Assembly (NCBI GenBank): GCA_002189035.1
Contig: NEEC01000004.1
Coordinates: 3,348,001-3,412,000, forward strand
Length of the DNA: 64,000 nt
Direction: 5' to 3'
From: Utricularia gibba
Lineage: Eukaryota; Plantae; Magnoliophyta
Part shown: one piece after another, positions 25,522-64,000 of the stretch
Numbering within the stretch: the stretch's first letter is position 1
Layout of the letters: every line of letters begins with the position of its first letter
Notes under the pieces: model-generated
Told to the model about the DNA's origin: nothing
Seen by the model: the letters and a program-made list of their open reading frames with translations, nothing else
Database searches by the model: none
Made by a program: the position numbers and the translations under genes

Positions 25522-25753
25522 TGGAGCGGTGCTTAATTGTTGTGTGTTTCTGTTGATGCGTTCATGTTCTTCTTGTGTAGGTGATTTCAATTTCAACCTA
25601 GAAATTGAAAAGGCTGCTAAGAGTAACCGCAATAGAGTGAGGGAAGTAGCAAGGTTGAGAAGACTCCCTGCTATAAATTAAGTTAATTTCATCATGGCAG
25701 AATAGGAGAAGACCCTGAATGAGCTTGATGCAGCTGACCATACGTACAGGGGG

Positions 25754-28166
25754 TTGTGTATCAGGTTTTCTGATGACACAGCCAACGAATTAAAGCCAAC
25801 TATGATTAATTTTCTGCCTAAGTACTATGGAAAGGTGGGAGAAAACCCACATGAACATCTAGACAACGTCACTGCTGTTTGCACCTCTTTTAAGAGTGGT
25901 GGGATGACTGAGGATGCCATCTATTTGAGGGCATTCGAATTTACACTAGAGGGAAATGCAAAAATATGGTTCAATTCGCTGAAGCCTAGAAGCATCATAG
26001 ACTGGTCAGGGATGAAGAAGGTGTTTCTCAGCAAGTATTTTCCTGCTTCCAAGGTTGAAGGGATACGAAAGGAGATCAGTGACATTGAGCAAACAAGTGG
26101 AGAATCTCTACATGAATATTGGGAGCGATTTAATCAATTGCTCAGATCTTGTCCTCACCATGGTTTTCAATCTGCTTCCTTGGTGAAGTATTTTTATGAT
26201 GGATTGTTATATTCTGATAGAGGAATGGTGGATTCAGCAGCTGGAGGATTTTTGAGAAAAAAGATGCCAACGAAAGCTCTTGCATTGCTTGAGAAGTTGG
26301 CTGAGCACTTCAGACATATCATCAGGAAGCAAGCTTCGAACAAGAGAATTTGTGAGGTGGAGTGCAAGCTAAAACCATCATAAAGTGAGCTCATGAAGAA
26401 TGTTGCTGCAATGTTTGAGATGATGAAGGAGTTATTTTTATTCCAAGCTAAGAATACACCATGCGGGAACTGTCGCAAACTTGGACATCTTGCTGATAAA
26501 TGTCCAAAGTTGTTCCAAAAGGAGCACGTCAAAGCTATGGGGGATTCAGAGCTTCAACTCAAGGGAAAATATGACACATATTCGAACACTTACAATCCAG
26601 GTTGGAGAAACACCCAAACTTTCATTAGAATAACAATGATGATATGTACAAGGGAGAAAGTTCAAGTATGGGGCAACAAAATCTCCAATGGAATTTTCAA
26701 GAGCAGCAGTAACGTTCATTTCAACCTCCACCATTTCAAAAACAAGTCTAGCAACCTCACTGCCAAAATAATGCTGGAGGAAATTCTGGGAATTCTTTAG
26801 AAGAGATGCTGAAAATGTTTATGGTGCAATCAACCAAAAATGAAGTGGAGAATTGATAAGCCATCAAGAATTTGGAGACTCAAGTGACTCAATTGGCACT
26901 GGAGCTTGGAGAATTAAAGAAGAAAGGAGAGCCAACAACGTCATATTCAAATTCTGGTGGAAAAATGAATTGCAGCACCATGACATTGAGGAACATAAAG
27001 GGGAAGCCAGATAGGAATTTAGTCCAATCTGGGACTAAAACTGACGAGAAGCAAGAATTTTGTGTTGCGGTTGGAGACAAGGAAGAAGTGATGGCTCATC
27101 GAGAACTTACTAAAGAAGAGATTATTCAACCACTTCTTTCTGGTAAGTTGGAAACAAAAGAAGAATAGGATGAGAAGGAGAAGATTTTAAAGTTTTTGGG
27201 TAATACTCAACTTAATTTGAATATTTTGGACTACATTTCCATGGTGCCACGAAGTGTCAAATATTTGAAACACCTTTGCATGTCCAAACCCAAGATGAAG
27301 GAAAAAGGAAAGGTATTTTTAAGTGAGATTTGTTCAACCTTCATCACCCAAAAACTTCCAGAAAAATGCAAGGATCTAGTTTATGAAGCCTTAGATTGAG
27401 ACCTTTGCAAACTGTTGGAGTACAAATTGAATTGACAAATCGATGCCTAATTTCTCCCAAAGGGTTGGTAGAAGATGTGTTAATTCAAATTGAAGATCTG
27501 ATATTTCCAGCTGATTATTATGTGGTCAATATACCTGCTGGAGGATCAAAGGATACTACCATAGTTTTAGGAAGACCATTTTTTAGCACATCCAATGTTA
27601 TTATCAATGTGAAAATGAGGACAATTGAATTGTCTCTTCATAAAGAGAGGATTTTACTTGAGGTGAAAGATGTGATAGAAAATCCTAGTGATTTTGAAGA
27701 TATTTGTTCTATGGAATCAACTGAAGTATTTGTTGAAGAACATATAGAGAGAGAAGATGACAAGAAAGAAAAAGAATATGAAGAAGTCTTTATTGAAGAA
27801 TCAAATGCTGGGGTTTTGGTTGATGTTGAGAAGAAAAATTACAGGGTTAGTCTTATCTTGGACCAAGAATCAACATTGATTGAAGGATTCATCCAAGATC
27901 CAAAAGAAATTTTGGATAATGTTGAAGGGGAGAATGTTTGTATTAATTACTTCAAGAAAATTGAAAGATCTGAAGATGCTTACATGGTTACAAAAACATG
28001 TCCTGACAAACAGTTACTCCTAGGTAAGACTATAACTTGGAAACGAGGTTCTACTGATATTGTTAATTTTATTGATGCAGGAATTGTACCAATTGGGAAC
28101 AAATGCAATGAAAAGAACATGTGTTTCAATGAGGAAGAATCTAACATTTGGGATGATCCATACTAG
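25754..28166 (+). pseudogene. gag-protease of element B with an RNaseH/integrase linker remnant
   Basis: FLPKYYGKVGENPHEHL...AFEFTLEGNAK (gag), CGNCRKLGHLADKC (CCHC knuckle), PKGLVEDVLIQIEDLIFPADY...LGRPF (protease region), then CPDKQLL...DIVNFIDAG...WDDPY. Confidence 0.85.
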
Positions 28167-49917: not shown

Positions 49918-50465
49918 GCTATCAACACTCCTCCTCATCATTTGAGTAAGAGTCCTAAATAGGAATACCAACCGAAAAGATTCTCATGCCGGATTGCATT
50001 GTAGCCAATCTTTTAAATTTTCAAGTTCGCGCTACACTGTAGTAGTAGTAGTAGCCCCCACCCCCCCCCTTTCATCATATAAATCCTCAATGTTTCAAGA
50101 GAAACACAACTTGTTTCTGTCGATGCCATCAGATATTAGGTTTTCTTTTTTTTCATCTATAAATGGATCAGGGTAGACAACACATCAATAATATCATATC
50201 ATATCCTTCTGATTATTAGGATACGTGGGCAATGAAGATCTCATGATGACACCCCGCCCCCACCCCATCCTACATCTTCCTAATAGCAGGATTTTTCTTT
50301 CAGTTAATTTGAAAAATATCCATATTTCTTCACCTTAATTTGAAAAATATTATACTCTCAAAATCTTTTACAAAATATCCAACCTTAATATGACTTTTAA
50401 ATATAAATGTCAAAAAAACAGAAATATAAGTGTATTTTATTTTTTTTGTTTTTTGTGTATATGTT

Positions 50466-51200
50466 TATATCTATGTGTATATTTATTATTTTATTAAAAT
50501 TATTCGAAACAATAATAAATATTGTATTATATGTATTTAAATTGTATAATATTGAAAAACATTGTAATAAAATATGATATATTATATTATTTAATTTAAT
50601 ATATAAAAAATAAATTTGGATATAGATATTTGGTAATAATTATTTATATATTATAATATTCAATCAATTCACAAAAAATACTTAAAGATTATTCAAAATT
50701 ATTATACTAAACGACTTCAGTTCATTATCTTTAATCCTAAAATATATATCATGTATATATATCTATATTAATTGTTTTATTAAAATTTTCAGAAGCAATA
50801 ATAAATGTTATATTATTTGTATTTATTGATATAGATATATGATAATTATTCTAAATATTTTTTCATATAAAATCAATACCCAAAAATACATAAATATTTA
50901 TTGAAAATCAATATACCAAATGCACAGATATATATATATATATATATATATATTCTCAATTATTTGTATATTAATATTTTAAGAAGTGATGATAATAATA
51001 CAATAAATTAATTTTTTTTAATTTTGTGTATAGATATATTTATATTTATTATTTTATTAGTTATTTAAAAAATGATAAATATCATATTATTTATATTTAA
51101 ATTATATACTACTAAAAACATATTCTCATAAAAATAGATATATTGTTTGTATAATTTGAAGATATAAAATAAATATTAATACAACTATTTGGTAAATATT
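50466..51200. repeat. Degenerate AT-rich direct repeats (three imperfect copies) with a (TA)n run
   Basis: Unit starting TATTTATTATTTTATTA...AATAATAAAT.TT.TATTAT at about 50480, 50765 and 51040; (TA)n at about 50927-50952. Confidence 0.6.
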
Positions 51201-51599
51201 TTTAATATTTGGTGTGTTACTTCAGAAAATATTTTCATGGTGAGTATATTTTTTAATGGATTATATTTGTTATTGATGAAGTGATTTTATTGGTGAGTAT
51301 GTGATCTATTACTCTGTCGAAAAATCTACAATCCAATAAATTATTTCAATATGAACTCTATAATAGAGAAATCATCAACAATGTCCATCTAGAAAAATTT
51401 TCATTATGAGTGTATTTTATTTTGTAGTGTTTATTAGAATAATGTGTTTGGATCATTGGATGTATTTTCTAATAATTAAAATTAAAGCTCTTTGAATATA
51501 ATTGGTCTAATACAATAATACTATGTATACTTATATTTTAAAAACTCGTAAAGATTACAATGCCCATATTCTTTTGCAATTGAAGGTTTCACACGTCAA

Positions 51600-54580
51600 A
51601 ATGTTTCCACGTAATTGCGTACATCATCCATTTCATATAATTCTTCCAAGAATAATAAAAGTTATTCATTACTCTGTAGTGCATTATCGTCCTTTTGCAA
51701 TATTGTAAGTAAAAGGAAACATTGCATTGTTTACCTGTTGAAAATGATTAAAAAAATTAACACATATGAATTCTACAGTAGCTATATACAATGACAAAGA
51801 GTTTACTGGATTTAGAAGTGACTTTTCTAGTGAATCGTCAATTAATAATGTATTACTAGTGTTATAACGATAGTTGAAGGTTGTATCGTCATTCCAAATG
51901 CGTCGTAAATCCTTAAATTTAATAGTGTTGAAGCTCCCCACCAATGGATATTTTTGTGTCAGTGTACATATTTATATCCCAACAAAATGCTAGATCTTTT
52001 CAACGACAACCTACAAGGATAAAGTCGACTATTTTAGGTACAATTCCATTACAAAGCAAAAATAGTTATTAGTGGTTAAATCATATCAATAATGCTATTC
52101 TATAAACTTACTCTTTTCATGAGGACCAAATGGCCATGTCAAACATTTCCATGAAAATATAAATTCGTTACAATGCACTTGATAAACAAAAATTTTCTAA
52201 TGTCATTGCAAAAATAGAAATTTTGTAACAAATAAATTAATAAGCCCTAATCTATACAAAATATGAATTTAGAAACAACAGTAGGTCGTAACAAATGAAT
52301 TTCGAGGTCGATCACAAGGAGCTTGTGCTTGTTAAGTGTTTCAGTAGATGTAGAGTTCGAAACAACAGTAGATCTTAGTCTAGGCTCATATTAACAGTAG
52401 TAAACAAGTTTAGTAAACAAAATCAGGTCTCAACGCTAAAGGTAACAAATACTGGTTTTAACTCAGAGTAATACTAAGATGCCTTAAAGGTCTGCAAATG
52501 GTGTGGTGTTAAAATGCCTAACTTAATTTATTATGTTCCTACACTCAAAACTTCAAATAACCTAAGTCTACTCAATTCATTCATCACATTTTCAGCTAAG
52601 CTAGTCTCCAATATCATCACGAACATTGTAATTAGGTCTACCCGCATGCAAAGCATATAGAATTAGGTCTACCCAATTCTACTAGTTATATTTCAAACTA
52701 ACACCTACTGTTTCCATCTTGATTTGTTGGTCAACTTCTAAATCAAACATCTTAGTTGTGAAGTTATTGTTCCCCTCTTTAGGTCTATCCATGGAATGAT
52801 ATAAACAAGAATTAAAAATAAATAAAAAATTTATTATTAACCCTGGATCCACACCACTATACTTTAACTTAAGGCATCTCTAAGGCCTAACTACTCATAC
52901 TTTGAAGGTAAAACATGATAACATTAATATAAAGTAGTGAAAATGCCAAGAACATTGTGAAAGAGTTGGTTGTAGAAACTAAAAACATCAACAAACGAAA
53001 GTAACGCTAGATTGGGTCTTGGTCTTTGTTCTTCACATTGGAGGTCTTCTCCAGAAAATTGCCCTTCCTTTTCCTTCTGGTTCAATATTCGTTGTGTTGG
53101 AGTTGGAGGAGAATCCCCCCTCGTGTGTGTGCTGAGAATTGCTCACACTCCTTTGCGATTCTCTCTCCTCTTGTTTTTTTCTCTCGCCTCACTTCCCAAA
53201 GTAAGTACAATCTCTGACAACTCAGCTGCTCCTGCCCCTAACCTGTAGGCTGTCGCTGCGACAATTTACTCATTGCTCCCTACTGCACGGTGACTTGTAT
53301 GAAATCCTTGTTTTTTCTATGATCTTGGGGTTGCTGCTAGACTTAAAATCGGATTAGAACATGGGTGGGCTAAATCCTCCCACTAATATCTCAAAAATAA
53401 CATTTTTCTAAGTTATATAAAAATGCTTAAAATTATAAAATAAGTAATAAAAGCATAATTAAAAAACTATAATTATCATATCCTAAAACATGAAAATTTG
53501 TGTGCTATCAGCACTCGATAAGTAGTTAGAGTGATAAAATTGTACTACTTATTTGCTCTCCACTCGAGAATGCAGTTATACTTTACTACCACACATCCCT
53601 TGTTCATGTACACAACATCTACAAATAGACCATTAATATTTAAAATGATTAATTTTATAGGACTTGAAATATCAACTTCATGAAGAGCGTACATTGGATA
53701 TATTGTTTCGTATTGGTAGATGATTTTCTTCTGTTGGTTTACTTCTTTTTTGGCCTCCTCAAACTCAAAAAGCAATTGCATAACATCATTATCCTCCACT
53801 TATTGAGGAGCAAATGTGTCGACAATCTCCTCGTTATAAACATCATGATGTGCTATATGCTGTCCTTCTACCTGATGTTCTTCAAGATGATTTTGCATTG
53901 TTCTTGTCCTACAATAAATGCCACATCAAATACATATTGAAGCTCTCACATTCAAAGTTGGTAGTTTAATATCTCTCCATCTCATGTATTTTTCTATTCA
54001 AGAGTTGGATAACTTAGAATATAAAAAACTATTAGTTGAAAACATAAAAAATGCTTAGAAAATCAAAAGAGTGTTAGAAATAAAACTTTTTCTACTTGTT
54101 GATTTTCCAACATTGGACAAGATTGAAAGTTGTCTAGGTATTCTTATCCTCGCGTCTTCTGGTGGAATGATCCATATGAAACTAGTCAATCAATCTCCAT
54201 AAGAATTTCATAAATCTGTTACAATTTTAATTTTTGTGAGCAACCTTGGAGCACTTTGCAATGCTAAATAATGTATCAATACTAAGCGGATATCCATCAT
54301 CTTCACATAACCTCATAAATACAATGATATTTTCAATGGAAGCTGGTGTTAAATGAGATATTGGAAGACTCATTGAATGGCACAGACTCAAAAAATAGTT
54401 GGATAGGTAATGTTAACCCACATCTAAAATGTTTGATAACTACAAAAGCATAGGTATCAACACGTTGTAGTGGTTGATCTAAAATTTATTCATCTAAAAT
54501 GGAGATCACGTAAAATCGTGAAGATTGAGTGTTCAAATCGAACAATATTGTATAAGGTGGGGAGAGGGTGGGTTGACATG
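51600..54580 (-). pseudogene. Chimeric pseudogene: Transposase_28-like (Tat antisense-ORF type) N-terminus plus FCP1/NIF-like HAD phosphatase C-terminus
   Basis: Minus-strand order: FRCGLTLPIQLFF, SLPISHLTPASIENIIVFMRLC, D*LTSFIWIIPPEDAR, acidic linker, KLIILNINGLFVDVV, YRVH|CNEFI..EMFDMAIWSS (split by the LTR), LAFCWD, FKDLRRIW, NTLLIDDSLEKSLLNP, NAMFPFTY, DVRNYV. Confidence 0.75.
52180..53510 (-). mobile_element. Solo LTR of a family-B-related lineage
   Basis: TGATAAACAAAAATTT (52180) ... TGTGTGCTATCA (53510), termini like the reverse B LTR; TSD GCACT (52175-52179, 53511-53515). Confidence 0.88.
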
Positions 54581-57038
54581 TATTGTGGTGTGGATGCAAT
54601 TTAATTGAAATAATTAGATTTGTTGCCAATTTTATCTAAACAGAAAATAAAATTATTAGAATAAACCAACTGATATAAAACAAGAGTCACAAAATATTCA
54701 TAAAAAATTAGTCAAATAATGAAAGTAATGAATGTTATAAATGTAATTTACATTATTTATTATTTTTAAATTCTCCTTCTCCATTAGAAAAAGCTACTAG
54801 TGCATTCTCCTTCTAAATCACCTTTTCATTCTTGTCTCCCCCCATCCCCTTCATTTTAAAAGAATGATCAATAGAACATTGTGTTTGCTTTGAGAAAATT
54901 GTCATAATGAGAAATGCTTAATTAGAAATATTAAATGGGAAAAGATATGTTTTAATAGAGGTATATTTTAAATATTATGCTTAATTTGAAAAGTAAAAAA
55001 TAAGATAGGAAACATGTTGGATAATTATATCTTTTTAAATAAACCATGATTGAAAATATATATTCTTTTCAAAATACATATAGAATATCAATTTATTTGA
55101 ACAAATCCAGAAGAAGTTTGTGGAAGGAAGAATAATAATAATAAAAAATATGGTGAATAATAATATTAAAAAAGAATAAAATTATTTTATATCAATTGAT
55201 ATTTAAATTCCTATCCCTCTCTCTTCTATTTCTTTCCCAAGTTCTAAATATTTAAAATTTATAATCTACATTTTTTAATTACTGAAGAAAAAATTAATTT
55301 CATATCCCTCTAGCAAACATAGCCTTAGATGGTTATGAGGAAAATGTTAAAATTAGAGTGGATATTTTTTAAACCCATGTATCTATCTTGTGACATTGGA
55401 AAATATCCCCAAATTGGAGTTTAGATGAATTTAGCCACATATGAAATATATCTACTTGATAGACAAGGATGGAACAGACCCAGATATGATGAATTGGCAA
55501 CAAGATTATAGATACAAGGGATTTGAGCATACAAAAAAACGCATTTTTTTCAGGATGGGACAGCAAGGCATGGGCTTCGTCTCGATCTCGCTCCCCATGA
55601 ATTAATATCAAGAGCCAGCTGTCACGTGAGGAGACCAACAGAATTAATTAGATAATACAAAATGAAAGTGATTTATGAGCGAGCTGTAGGTCTATTTACA
55701 ATTATATTCAACATAAAAAAATTGTATTTTACTCCATCTTTTCTTTTCTCTCCTATTTTATATACAAAAATAATGAAATATTGTTTACTGCATTTATGAA
55801 TATGAGCACATTAGATTTATATTCTATTTATCTTGTGCAACTTATTAAAATTAAATACATGATTATAAACAATTCAAAAAATAATTACGAAAATCTCATT
55901 ATTTTGTAAAGAAACTTAGCTCCATATGTCTCCACTATTTACTAAAACTAGTACAATAAATGTATAATATTTAATAAAAATGCTATGGTTAGTCTTTATT
56001 GACATATTTAGTTTCTAATTTTTAATTGGAATATATTTAATCTACATATTTTGATGTTTGATTATATTTAATCCTCTATTTTTTTAATTCAGTTATTTTT
56101 TTATCTTTTCTATTTAAATATAAATTATCATTAATTTTCAATGGAATATATTTAATTTTCATTGTATTCATAATTTGATAAAATTGATCCTTATTTTTTC
56201 AACTATCATCCAACCACCGTCCACAACCATACCCGTTGCACATGGCACATCACCACCCAGGCGATGGATAAGGATGATGAGCGATGGGTGATGTGGCTGG
56301 CAGTGGCCATTGGTGATTGATAATGATAAAATTGAATTAAAAAAAAAGATTTTAAATTAATGATTGATTTTATCATTAGTGTAAATAATGTAGATCATTC
56401 TTACTCGATAACTAATTATAAATAGTTTTGAAATAGTACGATTTATATATTGTTTTTCAAGACTAATTACGTTATTTATGTAAATAGTGGGTTATTGCCT
56501 TATTGGCGTAATTCTCTTGTAGATTTTTTTAAAACATGAAATATATACACTAAAAAGTAATGAATAATTGAAACGTAAAAAAGTGCGTCAAAAGTATTCT
56601 AATAAATGATACAAAAATATGTTTTAGAATGATACATTTTATTTAATTAAGATAATAGTTCTTATCATTTTTTATAAATATTATTTAATAATAAATAAAT
56701 ATAAGATATTATATTCATTATATTTGTCTGTGTATATATACTGTAATACTAGATATGCATATTTTCAATACTTCTATCGATATATAATTTTTTATTAATT
56801 TAATTTATATTTTTTAATAGATGATAATTATTAAAATGGACGATTTTTAAAATTTTATTTTGTATAATTATTTCGACTCCCCACCATTTACTTGGCTTTT
56901 CTTTTTCACTCTTCTGGGGGTCGCCTTCAATCGCGACCTTGCCTGAACTCCGCTCCCCGATCCCCACCTCCCTACACACGCACAATTTCGGTATATTGAT
57001 ATTCCAAAACTGTGGGCTTTCTTCCTGCTTTTGCTTAA

Positions 57039-59374
57039 ATGAGCAGAGCAGCAGCGCTGCAAATGCGATCGCCGTTTGTGAATATGGAAATCCCCGATGA
57101 TCCGGCGCCGTTTATACGATCGGAGTTCCTGCAAGTACTCCGTGCTCGTCGCTCTGCGGAAGGTCATTCAAATCCTCTCACGCGATTCCTTGATTTATTG
57201 AGCATTTTGAATGCTGGATAAAGTTTACACGCTTGTGCTAATGGAGAACCTCTGCAGTTCCTCTTAGTGTAGTGCCTGCCGCACCTGTTGGAGATCCACT
57301 TTTTCAAGTTCCTCCAACGCCGGAGAGCAGGAAGGTTGATTGCTTCTTCAATTCTGCCGTTTCAGGATATTCTTTTTTTAATCTTATATTGTGATTAAAT
57401 TTAGGTGATGGAGTCCTGCCCGAGAAGAGAAATTTCAAATTTCAATGAGCTCATCGTGGAAGAGAACTTCTACTTGACTACCGAGGCATGATGAGATACT
57501 ACTGTGTTCATATGAACTTCCTCTGATTTTAAAAAATTTCATTAGAAATGGTGGCTTTTCGAGAGGATCCTAAAAATCGAACTCCTCGACAACTGTTTCA
57601 GAGTCAACAGTCTGTTATTGTTCTTCTATGTGAGAATATCTTCCAAATCTGGAAACATGCTTTATCAGTATACTTTCCATGTAGGAAGGAGAACAGGGAA
57701 TGTTACCTGTTTTATTAGTAAAACTCAAGGAAAGCTCTCCCAGAAGAAGGCCAGCAATTGTCATCTTGCATAGCACTAACAAATGCAAAGAGTGGTTGCT
57801 ACCTTTACTTGAGGTAGCGCATAGCAATTGTTCTCGACATTTATACCAGTGCATAATCCATTTTTTCCGCTCACATCTGATTATTCCAGGCATATGCTTC
57901 GAGGGGTTACATATCCTTAGCCATTGACTCACGTTATCATGGAGAGCGTGCTAGAGTAACAACTTATAAAGATGTGGGCTTCCACAGTATTTAGTTTGTT
58001 TTACTGCTTATGAAAAACTCTAAAATCTGTTTCTGATTTTGCTGTAGGCTCTGGTGTCATCCTGGGACATTGGAAACACAATGCCTTTTATATATGACAC
58101 TGTATGTAATTTGTGTTTGAAAAATCAATGGTTGTATGCTACAGAATTAACATAATTGGATTATTGCAGGTCTGGGACTTGATAAAATTAGCTGATCATC
58201 TTACCGACAGGGAAGATGTAGATCATGATAGAATCGGAATAACTGGTGAATCGCTTGGAGGTGGGGTGGATTTCCTCGAGTCAATGTGCTTGCTTGTTGG
58301 AAAGAAAATCACCGGCATTCGTTATTATATTCAATTTATGCTCATTCGTTTGATTGTTTTCTCTTCTACTTAACCCAGGAATGCATGCGTGGTTTGCTGC
58401 AGTTGCTGATACTCGATATTCAGTGGTTGTCCCTATAATTGGGGTTCAGGTAGACCTAACAACTTGTCCTTTGGGATATTTAAATCAGATATCGTGTGCT
58501 TAATGTGTATTTTTCAGTTGTAGCTACTCCGAATCTACTAGTATAGAATATTTACCTTCAAGTTTCAACCTTAAAAAACCATTTAACTATCGATCATCCA
58601 CACGTCATCCACCTATGAAGTATCTTTTGTGTTAATAGAAGGTAAAGACTATTTCAGGGCTTTCGATGGGCTATTGATCATGACAAGTGGGAGGGCCGTG
58701 TAAACAGCATCAGAGCTGTATTTGAAAGTGAGATAGTTTAAATGAGAATCGGCATTTATTTCTATTAGTTTGAGAGTCGGATCTCATGATCTTGAATTTA
58801 AGTTCTTGGTTTTCAGAAGCAAGAGCTGATTTAGGAAAAAGTTCAATTGATAAAGAAGTGGTGGAGAGAGTGAGTCTTTCTCTCATCCTACCATTCCGGC
58901 TTTCTCCCTCCCAAACGTCTGTAGTGGATGAATGTTGGTAATTCTTCTAAACAGGTATGGGATAGAATAGCTCCTGGCCTGGCTTCTCGTTTCGATTCTC
59001 CTTATACTCTTGCAGCAATTGCACCTCGGCCCCTGCTCATATTGAACGGTTAGCAAACGCATTGGTGCTCGAGCTTAGGAGAAAAGGAACCCAATTAGTG
59101 ATTGCTTTGACTTACAGGTGCAGAAGATCATCGTTGCCCCCTTGATGGATTGGAAGTTCCGGAAACGATGGCGAAGCAGGCATATGAAAAGCACCACTCG
59201 GAACAATATTTCAAGGTGCGGTAACTCCCACTAACGCAAAAGATGGTGAGCTAACTCTCACCTTTCTTTCCTCTTCCTCACCAGCTAGTAGCAGAGCCAG
59301 GGATCGGCCATGAAATGACAGTTTCAATGGTCAAACAAGCCAGTGACTGGTTCGATCAGCACTTGAATCCGTAA
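57039..59374 (+). CDS. Alpha/beta hydrolase superfamily protein (esterase/peptidase-like)
   Basis: Exons give PAIVILHSTNKCKEW, AIDSRYHGERA, RIGITGESLG|GMHAW (GxSxG), FDSPY...IAPRPLLILN|GAEDHRCP and EPGIGHEMT; stop TAA 59372-59374. Confidence 0.92.
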
Positions 59375-62629: not shown

Positions 62630-64000
62630 ATGCGTTCCGCTGGATTTTTGAAACCCTCTTCTTCTCATCCTAATCCCTCCACGGGTTTCTGCTCTTCGTT
62701 CGTCCCCTTTGCAACTTCCTCCCCCTTTCAGTTCTCGAAAACGAAATGGGCAGAAGATCTAGCGCACTGAACATCCTGCAATCCACTCCAAATATTTAAT
62801 TCCGGAAGAATATATCATTTCTCAAACTAGGGATGGTCAGATTCCTTGGGGATCTGGGGAAAGGCCTCTTCCCCGTTTTAGTCTCCCCATCCCCATTGCC
62901 TATTTAGAAAGCGGCCTCCGATTTCTGCTCCATCCTCTACTTGTTCAGTTTCTTCATATGTTTGCAACCCCCCTCTATTGCCTAGCCCTGAATTTGATCT
63001 TCTACTTTATTGCCTTCTTGTTCTACTCGGCGGGTATGGATCTAACAATGACCTCGATGGTTTTTTTTTTCAACTCTTCAAAGTTGCAGTCAGAAAAGCT
63101 AAGTCGCTGATGCATGAGCGTGCTCACTTTCAATTTCACCAGTTCGAAGATCATCCCGATTTCATCGTTAAACCTCCCGATACCCATCATGATTGGTGGT
63201 CTTCCTTTATTTGGGTGGCTCCCCCCATAGGAGCTAGATGGAACTTCCCGATTAAGCCTCCTGGTCCCTTTGAGGTTAAACCATCTGGCCGCTTTCGCCC
63301 TTCTAACGATTCTCGAAGAGATGTGTATCGGAGGCTCAGCGAATGCTCTGTGAAATACGAGTCCCAGTCACATTCGGGGGGGGGGGGGGCATGGTCCGAT
63401 TTCATCATTCCCCCCGGTTCTGAGTTAGAATTTTGTCATCTCTTTCAATCTCCACCCAATATCCCTGTTATTTCTGGTACACCTCCCACTTCTGATTCGA
63501 TAAATCCATTTCCCTCAGATCTGGTTCCCGAATCTTCTGTTTGCCCTTCGCCTCAAAAGAAAAGAAAAAGAGTTAAGGTTCACACACAGAAACCTTCTAA
63601 AAGGCACAAAGGTAGTTATGTTCTGCCACCCTGAATTGTAATGCCTTTATCGTGTTTCACCGCCTTTCCAACTTTCGCATGCAGCTGAAGAGATGGTACG
63701 ACGGAGTGCCCTGGAGGACTCAGTAATGGCCCGTTTCTTAGTTGAGATGCAGAGGATGTGGGTGCCCGAGGTGACCTCTTCCGCACAGGTTTGTTTTTCC
63801 GTATATTGATTTCAAATTCCCGAGTCTGACCCATTTCATTTCTTCCTCTAGGCCGGTTTTCCAGAAGTTCAGCCAAATGCTGTCGATTTGACTGTGGAAG
63901 GAGGCCGGGTAATTGGGGTTCCTGAGATTTGGGAAAAGGAAGCTGTCTCCCTCGCCAACACCTGCCGAAAGTCCAGCTCTCGGCGTGAGCCCCTTTTTCG
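62630..64000 (+). pseudogene. Antisense additional gene of the Tat element (Transposase_28-like), spliced, with frameshifts in its 5' part
   Basis: SKYLIPEEY, YLESGLRFLLHPLLVQFLHMF, HHDWWSSFIWVAPP. TATAAATA at 62458-62465. GT-AG introns 63612-63684 and 63789-63851 keep the frame open to the window end. Confidence 0.72.

What the first reader, a model, noticed from the sequence alone, without database searches (positions are those of the whole stretch)
51600..54580. Retrotransposon antisense-ORF protein apparently fused to an FCP1/NIF-type CTD-phosphatase domain
The N-terminal part is homologous to the Tat antisense protein in this window: YGD*LTSFIWIIPPEDARIRIP versus HHDWWSSFIWVAPPIGARWNFP (10 of 22 identical, and the stop is TGA where TGG is expected), plus the GLxxP...LxP block. 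On the same strand, after an acidic linker, follow the motifs of the plant FCP1-like HAD phosphatase subfamily in order, with intron-like gaps. The first catalytic Asp position reads Asn (NINGLF versus DxNGLL). FCP1/SCP-family enzymes include RNA polymerase II CTD phosphatases. Inference: a Tat-lineage antisense gene captured a host phosphatase, possibly as an active or decoy modulator of transcription or silencing. Introns could persist because they are antisense to the genomic RNA. I do not recall this domain pairing, but could not search for it. Continuity of the fusion across the frameshifted linker is inferred.
Basis: partly seen in the sequence, partly recalled or inferred. Interest (0 to 1): 0.75.

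Follow-up and report, generated by a model that had tools for sequence, protein, structure and literature searches.

The report
Dead TRP28–phosphatase-like fusion gene copy
This stretch of plant DNA is a long-dead copy of a gene that put a retrotransposon-type domain (TRP28) in front of a phosphatase-like domain copied from an ordinary plant gene; the pairing is unpublished as far as I could search, but this copy is broken, lies alone between two host genes, and our scan has already seen the same pairing at many other places in this genome.

Summary
On the minus strand, 54,485 to 51,521, a TRP28/Transposase_28-like module is followed in the same orientation by a complete, collinear FCP1/NIF-like gene body.

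- **TRP28 part:** PF04195 scores E 1.7e-4, below Pfam's cut-off. 25 of 30 best Atlas clusters carry PF04195.
- **NIF part:** A model I built from 31 host proteins hits five pieces in order, and only here in the 64 kb.
- **Gene structure:** It reads as five exons. Three introns sit at host-gene positions and two host introns are missing.
- **State:** It is dead, with at least 8 in-frame stops, at least 4 frameshifts, and the nucleophile Asp changed to Asn.

The locus is not inside a Tat element. It lies between a WD40 gene and a Peptidase_S9 gene, with no pol, LTR, transposase or terminal repeats nearby. The link to the window's own Tat antisense gene rests on one 24-residue block.

I found no protein or paper with both domains. 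This scan has already reported the same fusion on other DNA of this genome, many times, inside MULE, hAT and PIF transposons. I could not check those notes. Function is untested.

The parts
54087..54485 (-). Exon 1 (approximate): TRP28/Transposase_28-like module. It is read in three frames because of two frameshifts. It includes GLTLP (54418-54404), the PF04195-matching piece (54230-54412) and 'LTSFIWIIPPEDARIRIP' (54189-54136). TGA stops lie at 54210-54208 and 54192-54190, the second opposite a conserved Trp.
   Evidence: PF04195 E 1.7e-4, 22.2 bits. Atlas: 25 of 30 best named clusters carry PF04195, top score 0.96. Translation. tblastx block against the Tat antisense ORF. The spacing of G21, P25, P46 and F55 of the published TRP28 logo (PMC11963269) fits if one base is gained or lost in the T-run near 54390.
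53909..54086 (-). Candidate intron 1, the junction between the TRP28 exon and the host-derived part. The acceptor ttattgtag|G at 53909/53908 is good. The donor is uncertain: GT at 54086 gives 178 nt and breaks the frame, GT at 54118 gives 210 nt and keeps it.
   Evidence: Script check of GT..AG pairs. Removing the interval takes out three of the four stops between the modules. This is inference, not shown.
53548..53908 (-). Exon 2: acidic linker plus HAD motif I, 'KLIILNINGLFVDVVY'. One TAA lies at 53802-53800. The exon ends where the first NIF exon of host genes ends (about model position 164).
   Evidence: Host-family model positions 102-149, E 4.9e-4. tblastn to P0006, P0011 and P0020. Host exon ends from plant contigs.
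52197..53547 (-). Intron 2, about 1.35 kb. It contains a G+C-richer stretch (52900-53350) of unknown origin.
   Evidence: No repeat elsewhere in the window, no Rfam match, no Pfam hit on its ORF pieces.
52112..52196 (-). Exon 3: '..RIYIFMEMFDMAIWSS*KE', HAD motif II region. TAA lies at 52170-52168 and TGA at 52119-52117. The donor GTAAGT starts at 52111. The 5' half is decayed and the start is approximate.
   Evidence: Host-family model positions 179-189. Same exon as the host exon covering positions 164-193.
51807..52050 (-). Exon 4: 'VPKIVDFILVGCR*KDLAFCWD' then, after a frameshift near 51970, 'CTLTQ..KFKDLRRIWN..NTLLIDDSLEKSLLNP'. TGA lies at 52002-52000. It equals two host exons joined: the host intron at CW|D is absent. 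The acceptor of intron 3 is degenerate.
   Evidence: Model positions 209-225 and 219-277, E 1.2e-9. phmmer against 1.8 billion representatives. Host exon map.
51735..51806 (-). Intron 4: 72 nt, GT..AG, phase 0 after 'LLNP'. It is at the same position as in host genes and is open in frame, so it reads through.
   Evidence: Val (a GTx codon from the donor) follows NP in all 17 read-through ORFs aligned. Host exon ends.
51521..51734 (-). Exon 5: 'VNNAMFPFTYNIAK', a frameshift, then 'DDNALQSNE*LLLFLEELYEMDDVRNYVETF*RVKPSI..'. TAA lies at 51664-51662 and TGA at 51598-51596. It equals two host exons joined: the host intron after 'LG' is absent.
   Evidence: Model positions 304-321. Host exon map.

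Best explanation
This is a non-functional, isolated remnant of a chimeric five-exon gene. Exon 1 encoded a TRP28 (Transposase_28, PF04195) module, the domain typical of antisense genes of Retand/Tat retrotransposons. Exons 2-5 are a genomic copy, introns included, of a eudicot host gene of the 'FCP1 homology domain, C1271.03c-like' NIF family. That family itself has D-x-N-G in place of the catalytic DxDx(T/V) motif.

**Shown**
- Both modules are present, on one strand and in order.
- Three intron positions are shared with host genes.
- Lesions are heavy: at least 8 stops, at least 4 frameshifts, nucleophile Asp to Asn.
- The locus lies in a 7.4 kb spacer between two host genes, with no recognisable carrier element.

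**Inferred**
- The two modules were once spliced into one protein across intron 1.
- The copy belongs to the transposon-borne TRP28-NIF gene family that this scan has noted at many other loci of the same genome.
- When intact, such a protein used TRP28 to reach nucleic acid or chromatin, and the phosphatase-like domain to act on or bind a phosphoprotein such as the RNA polymerase II CTD, to the benefit of its transposon.

This copy does nothing now.
For: **NIF part**
- phmmer of 51687-51971 finds plant NIF proteins, which carry PF03031.
- The host-family model gives five collinear minus-strand hits, and only here among 4,345 ORF pieces.
- 53 of 142 aligned positions match the host consensus.
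- FastTree places it inside a eudicot clade (support 0.91-0.99) on a branch ten times the median length.

**TRP28 part**
- PF04195 E 1.7e-4.
- Atlas: 25 of 30 clusters carry PF04195.
- The W..FIW..PP block matches the Tat antisense ORF.

**Structure**
- Introns at model positions about 164, 192 and 277 coincide with host exon ends seen in plant contigs and in read-through ORFs.

**Linkage**
- It is the only PF04195 hit in 13 kb, directly upstream of the only NIF-like locus in 64 kb, on the same strand.
- Removing intron 1 takes out 3 of 4 intervening stops.
- The five-exon count agrees with the scan's earlier notes.
Against: - No intact protein with both domains was found. The 23 relatives in the 1.8-billion library and the top 120 host relatives are NIF-only. 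The word search with the exon-4 piece found only a 96% identical 85-aa ORF.
- The best-looking donor/acceptor pair for intron 1 breaks the frame.
- PF04195 is below Pfam's own cut-off, and PF03031 does not hit the pieces.
- No transposase, terminal inverted repeats or LTR were found, so no carrier is shown here.
- The recurrence of the fusion rests on unchecked notes of this scan.
Confidence: 0.65

Rival explanations
1. Chance neighbours. A decayed duplicate of a host NIF gene and an unrelated scrap of a Retand/Tat antisense gene landed side by side and were never one gene.
For: - No protein with both domains turned up in public collections.
- The most canonical splice pair for intron 1 is out of frame.
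- The genome is rich in retroelement debris.
- Both parts are too decayed to date.
Against: - The two parts share a strand, are in the right order and lie about 200 bp apart.
- The TRP28 scrap has no other Tat sequence around it.
- It is the only PF04195 hit in 13 kb, beside the only NIF-like locus in 64 kb.
- The NIF body lacks any host-type N-terminal exon hit.
- Unchecked notes of this scan report the same pairing at many other loci.
Confidence: 0.2
2. The gene is the antisense gene of a Tat-lineage LTR retrotransposon that captured a host phosphatase, kept its introns because they are antisense to the genomic RNA, and may act as an active or decoy modulator.
For: - TRP28 is characteristic of Retand antisense ORFs (PMC11963269).
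- A 24-residue block matches the Tat antisense ORF in this window.
- Intron retention is compatible with an antisense position.
Against: - No gag, pol or LTR lies on either side. Host genes lie at 47.7-49.4 kb and 56.9-59.2 kb.
- There is no DNA similarity to the Tat element at 60-64 kb.
- The TRP28 cores do not align.
- The copy is dead.
- Earlier notes place other copies in DNA transposons, which also preserve introns.
Confidence: 0.1
3. A live host gene with unusual splicing or recoding.
For: A 96% identical 85-aa ORF exists in another public assembly (P0001).
Against: - At least 8 in-frame stops and at least 4 frameshifts are spread over all five exons.
- The acceptor of intron 3 is degenerate and the nucleophile is lost.
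- The branch is ten times the host median.
- Of the two real differences from P0001, one lies in the intron read-through.
Confidence: 0.02

Closest known systems
TRP28 (Transposase_28, PF04195) antisense proteins of Retand/Tat LTR retrotransposons (PMC11963269)
   Same: The N-terminal module has the TRP28 core (GL..P, ..P.., ..F..LC spacing) followed by the W..F(I/F)(W/F)V block. It is plant-specific, of unknown function, and predicted to bind DNA.
   Different: Here it is not antisense inside a retrotransposon, and it is followed by a NIF-like gene body. That paper lists other extra domains (topoisomerase 2, Mis12, Smc and others) but no phosphatase ('phosphatase' occurs 0 times).
Land-plant 'FCP1 homology domain-containing protein C1271.03c-like' NIF family (PF03031; often auto-named TIM50)
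   Same: Exons 2-5 are homologous over the whole domain. They share three intron positions, the D-x-N-G type of motif I, the IWSS motif and the LLIDDS motif.
   Different: - About 37% identity to the host consensus.
- Two host introns are missing.
- The host N-terminal exon is replaced by a TRP28 exon.
- The nucleophile is Asn.
- It is a pseudogene.
PMD-PP7 fusions (Arabidopsis MAIL3, grapevine VvMAIL2.2) and the MAIN/MAIL1-PP7L complex (PMC7156037)
   Same: A transposon-derived plant domain is joined, in cis or in trans, to a phosphatase or phosphatase-like domain. That module has a role in TE silencing and gene expression.
   Different: The domains differ on both sides: PMD rather than TRP28, and a PPP-type PP7 rather than a HAD-type NIF. 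Those are domesticated, conserved host genes. This one is a dead copy, apparently transposon-associated.
Gene capture by plant transposons (Pack-MULE-type transduplication; accessory genes such as the ULP1 protease of some MULEs). Stated from general knowledge, not checked in a paper here.
   Same: A host gene copied as genomic DNA with its introns, then joined to TE-derived coding sequence.
   Different: No TIRs, target-site duplication or transposase were found at this locus, so capture by a DNA transposon is not shown here.

Membership tests
TRP28 / Transposase_28 (PF04195) | Match to the Pfam model at or above the gathering score | tested here: not met
   22.2 bits, E 1.7e-4, against a cut-off of 26.2, on 54230-54412. 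The domain is split by a frameshift, so only part of it can be scored.
TRP28 / Transposase_28 (PF04195) | Conserved positions G21, P25, L34, P46, N47, F55 of the published logo (PMC11963269) | tested here: inconclusive
   G, P, P and F are at the right spacing if a 1-nt change in the T-run near 54390 is allowed. N47 reads Ala and L34 reads Cys with Leu next to it. This was read by eye, not scored.
TRP28 / Transposase_28 (PF04195) | Recognised as the family by an independent method | tested here: met
   Atlas feature search: 25 of 30 best named clusters carry PF04195. Top score 0.96 with 175 shared features.
NIF / FCP1-like HAD phosphatases (PF03031) | Match to the Pfam NIF model | tested here: not met
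   No PF03031 hit on any exon piece, even at E up to 10. The relatives found by phmmer do carry PF03031.
NIF / FCP1-like HAD phosphatases (PF03031) | Homology over the whole domain to bona fide members | tested here: met
   The host-family model hits five collinear pieces covering positions 102-321, best E 1.2e-9. phmmer gives E 1.6e-5 to P0006 in a library of 1.8 billion. tblastn gives 2e-10.
NIF / FCP1-like HAD phosphatases (PF03031) | Catalytic motif I DxDx(T/V), with nucleophile and general acid/base Asp | tested here: not met
   This copy reads N-I-N-G. The host subfamily reads D-x-N-G in about 130 of the 157 motif-I matches counted in 163 fetched proteins. So even the parent family lacks the second Asp, and activity is doubtful for the family and absent here.
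Retand/Tat antisense gene | Lies antisense between pol and the 3' LTR of an LTR retrotransposon | tested here: not met
   No retroelement domain in 49.3-62.4 kb. Host genes lie on both sides. No DNA similarity to the Tat element at 60-64 kb.
Transposon-borne TRP28-NIF fusion gene (family noted earlier by this scan, unpublished) | Five exons: a TRP28 exon followed by a NIF body with host-type introns | tested here: met
   My own exon model gives five exons. The notes say 'five-exon gene'. I could not see their sequences. A sequence look-up in the scan's index was blank.
Transposon-borne TRP28-NIF fusion gene (family noted earlier by this scan, unpublished) | Carried inside a MULE, hAT or PIF element | tested here: not met
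   No transposase domain and no convincing terminal inverted repeats around this copy.

The most novel reading that the evidence does not exclude
TRP28-NIF is a real, once-selected accessory gene family of plant transposons. It would be a chimera of a retrotransposon DNA-binding-type domain and a pseudo-phosphatase (DxN) copied from a host gene. Its product would dock on a phosphoprotein such as the Pol II CTD, or on silencing factors, to favour transposon expression. In logic it would be the transposon-side counterpart of the host PMD-PP7 module. This locus would be one fossil of it.
Probability: 0.2. Interest if true: 0.7.

Novelty: new variant of a known kind. Interest (0 to 1): 0.35.

Why it matters
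- TRP28 is a widespread plant transposon domain with no known function.
- A recurrent fusion to a CTD-phosphatase-like domain would give a first functional hint: a link to phospho-dependent transcription or silencing.
- It would also parallel the PMD-PP7 module of host genomes.
- This copy cannot test that. It is dead and has no carrier.
- Its value is as one more dated fossil. It is also a clean case showing that the phosphatase-like part came from a eudicot host gene as genomic DNA: three shared introns, two lost.

Tried and rejected
1. Pfam NIF on single exon pieces gave no hit. I replaced it with a host-family model.
2. Search for a fused protein:
   - The big representative search with the exon-4 piece gave 23 hits, none fused.
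   - The word search with P0016 residues 345-560 gave 120 listed hits, all PF03031 only.
   - The word search with the exon-4 piece gave only P0001.
   - The word search with the Tat antisense ORF gave nothing.
   - The length filter of the word search keeps short exon queries from reaching full-length fusions.
4. The metagenome scan gave 79 plant-like loci. All are host-type NIF genes or transcripts, and phmmer with the window's TRP28 pieces found no TRP28 beside them. They served only to map host introns.
5. Search for a carrier: Pfam on 186 ORF pieces from 49.3-62.5 kb, inverted repeats, tandem repeats, Rfam and self-BLAST. Nothing was found.
6. The Atlas search with the linker piece was uninformative.
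7. Direct alignment of the two TRP28-like cores in the window was not significant.
8. A motif-I-like 'KHKLLVIDLEIHLL' inside intron 2 (52250-52390, E 3.8) is taken as chance.
9. Species identification was not attempted. The host exons are too short for the length filter.
Scripts joined exon 1 and exon 2 candidates only to count stops. They merged the exon pieces, with gaps at the breaks, only for an identity count and a tree.
Full report
**Setting.** The window is plant nuclear DNA (36.6% G+C).
- Retroelement debris lies at 5-9.4 kb and 25.7-29 kb: gag, RT-RNaseH and ATHILA ORF1.
- Host genes lie at 36-39 kb (BMS1/Tsr1-like) and 47.7-49.4 kb (WD40).
- A Peptidase_S9-type gene lies at about 56.9-59.2 kb on the + strand.
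- The finding lies on the minus strand in the 7.4 kb, very A+T-rich spacer between the WD40 and Peptidase_S9 genes.

**The phosphatase-like part is real.** Pfam's generic NIF model does not hit any single exon piece. Other tests do.
- phmmer of 51687-51971 against 1.8 billion representatives returned 23 hits. Apart from a near-identical 85-aa ORF (P0001, 96%) and a few large proteins that look spurious (P0003, P0015), they are plant proteins or ORF fragments of one family.
- The longer hits carry PF03031. Their sources name them 'FCP1 homology domain-containing protein' or, by automatic transfer, 'TIM50'.
- I built a model from 31 such host proteins and ran it against all 4,345 six-frame pieces of the window. 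The best-scoring hits are five collinear minus-strand pieces at this locus; the other seven hits listed are all weak (E 1.2 or more), one inside intron 2 and six scattered elsewhere in the window:
  - 53548-53799, model positions 102-149, E 4.9e-4
  - 52120-52167, positions 179-189
  - 51922-51999, positions 209-225
  - 51687-51971, positions 219-277, E 1.2e-9
  - 51599-51661, positions 304-321
- Overall, 53 of 142 aligned positions equal the host consensus.
- A quick FastTree places the merged pieces inside a eudicot clade. SH-like support is 0.91-0.99 on the enclosing nodes and 0.75 for the pairing with Oxalis. The terminal branch is 2.0 against a median of 0.2. Rows used were the 31 host proteins of 320-470 aa; longer multi-unit proteins were left out.

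**The TRP28 part is probable.**
- The piece 54230-54412 hits PF04195 at E 1.7e-4. That is 22.2 bits, below the 26.2 cut-off.
- It is the only PF04195 hit among 96 ORF pieces from 49.3-62.5 kb.
- One frame off and just upstream lies 'GLTLP'. With a single-base change in a T-run near 54390, the G, P, P and F positions of the published TRP28 logo fall at the right spacing.
- The Atlas feature search gives PF04195 for 25 of the 30 best named clusters, top score 0.96.
- Downstream follows the 'W..FIW..PP..AR...P' block. It matches the window's Tat antisense ORF at 10 of 24 residues, with TGA opposite Trp.
- That block is the only link to the window's own Tat gene. The Tat TRP28-like core (62763-63107) does not hit PF04195 and does not align with this one.

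**Gene model and state.** The locus reads as five exons. Boundaries are approximate unless stated.
- E1, about 54485-54087: the TRP28 module.
- Intron 1: good acceptor at 53909/53908.
- E2, 53908-53548: acidic linker and motif I.
- E3, about 52196-52112: FDMAIWSS, with donor GTAAGT at 52111.
- E4, about 52050-51807.
- Intron 4: 72 nt, 51806-51735, in frame and open.
- E5, 51734-51521.

Host exon ends come from 79 plant-like contigs fetched from metagenomes and from read-through ORFs. They lie at model positions about 164, 192, 215, 277 and 297. This copy keeps the introns at 164, 192 and 277 and lacks those at 215 (CW|D) and 297 (LG|). So the phosphatase-like part was copied as genomic DNA, not from mRNA.

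Lesions:
- In-frame stops at 54210, 54192, 53802, 52170, 52119, 52002, 51664 and 51598.
- Frameshifts near 54390, 54230, 51970 and 51695.
- No AG in front of E4.
- Asn in place of the nucleophile Asp.

The copy is dead.

**The DxN motif belongs to the host family.** Of the 157 motif-I matches counted in 163 fetched proteins, about 130 read DVNG, DLNG, DING or DMNG. The whole plant subfamily therefore lacks the second catalytic Asp of DxDx(T/V). The 'decoy' flavour is inherited, not a result of the fusion.

**Was it one gene?**

For:
- Same strand, right order, about 200 bp apart.
- Removing an intron ending at the strong acceptor takes out three of the four stops between the modules.
- No host-type N-terminal exon is detectable.
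- No other Tat sequence surrounds the TRP28 piece.

Against:
- The best donor (54086) breaks the frame. Only the weaker donor at 54118 keeps it.
- I found no public protein with both domains and no paper that mentions both Pfam families or related word pairs.

**What this scan already noted.** Many notes on other DNA of the same genome describe dead copies of a five-exon TRP28-NIF gene inside MULE, hAT and PIF/Harbinger elements. Their authors judged it once selected and unpublished. These are unchecked AI notes, and I could not read those loci. My exon count and the DxN point agree with them. The carrier does not: here there is no transposase, TIR or LTR.

**Mechanism.** For this copy there is none. 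For the family, my best guess is an accessory protein. Its TRP28 part would bring it to nucleic acid or chromatin; it is predicted to bind DNA (PMC11963269). Its NIF-like part would bind or dephosphorylate a phosphoprotein. This is inference only. The nearest described logic is the host PMD-PP7/PP7L module, found in trans (MAIN/MAIL1-PP7L) and fused (MAIL3, VvMAIL2.2), which acts in TE silencing (PMC7156037).

**Limits.**
- The word search cannot reach full-length fusions from short exon queries.
- The species was not identified.
- No contig looked human.

Noticed in passing
Neither piece hits PF04195, even at E up to 10. The 250-aa ORF has no relative of 137-437 aa in the word search.
   Followed up: partly
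window 26063-26166 (-): Rfam snoR71 (plant C/D-box snoRNA) sits just at the gathering score (40.2 against 40 bits). It lies inside a retrotransposon gag-like ORF region (25706-26380, +).
   Followed up: no
window 56900-59250 (+): A multi-exon host gene of the Peptidase_S9 / alpha-beta hydrolase type ('GITGESLGGG'). It is the right-hand neighbour of the locus. The left-hand neighbour is a nearly intronless WD40 gene at 47.7-49.4 kb whose reading frame is split into three long ORFs.
   Followed up: partly
window 50449-50649 and 51012-51208: A 200-bp direct repeat (75% identity) lies in DNA of 11-26% G+C just downstream of the dead gene. Many low-complexity inverted matches span the spacer. None is convincing as a transposon end.
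   Followed up: partly
window 52900-53350: A G+C-richer stretch (about 40%) lies inside the 1.35 kb intron 2. It has no repeat in the window and no Pfam or Rfam match. It could be an old insertion.
   Followed up: partly
L006-L008, L011, L016, L017 (metagenome contigs Ga0315913/14, Ga0228710/11): Plant-like contigs in metagenomes carry two or three host NIF genes in tandem, 3-5 kb apart, each with the same six-exon NIF body.
   Followed up: no
P0010 (Ricinus communis XP_048236319.1) and P0011 (Turnera subulata KAJ4835209.1): These are annotated NIF-family proteins whose motif I has lost the nucleophile Asp (LSLG and ISLGG; LYLNG). They may be decayed or captured copies in other eudicots.
   Followed up: no
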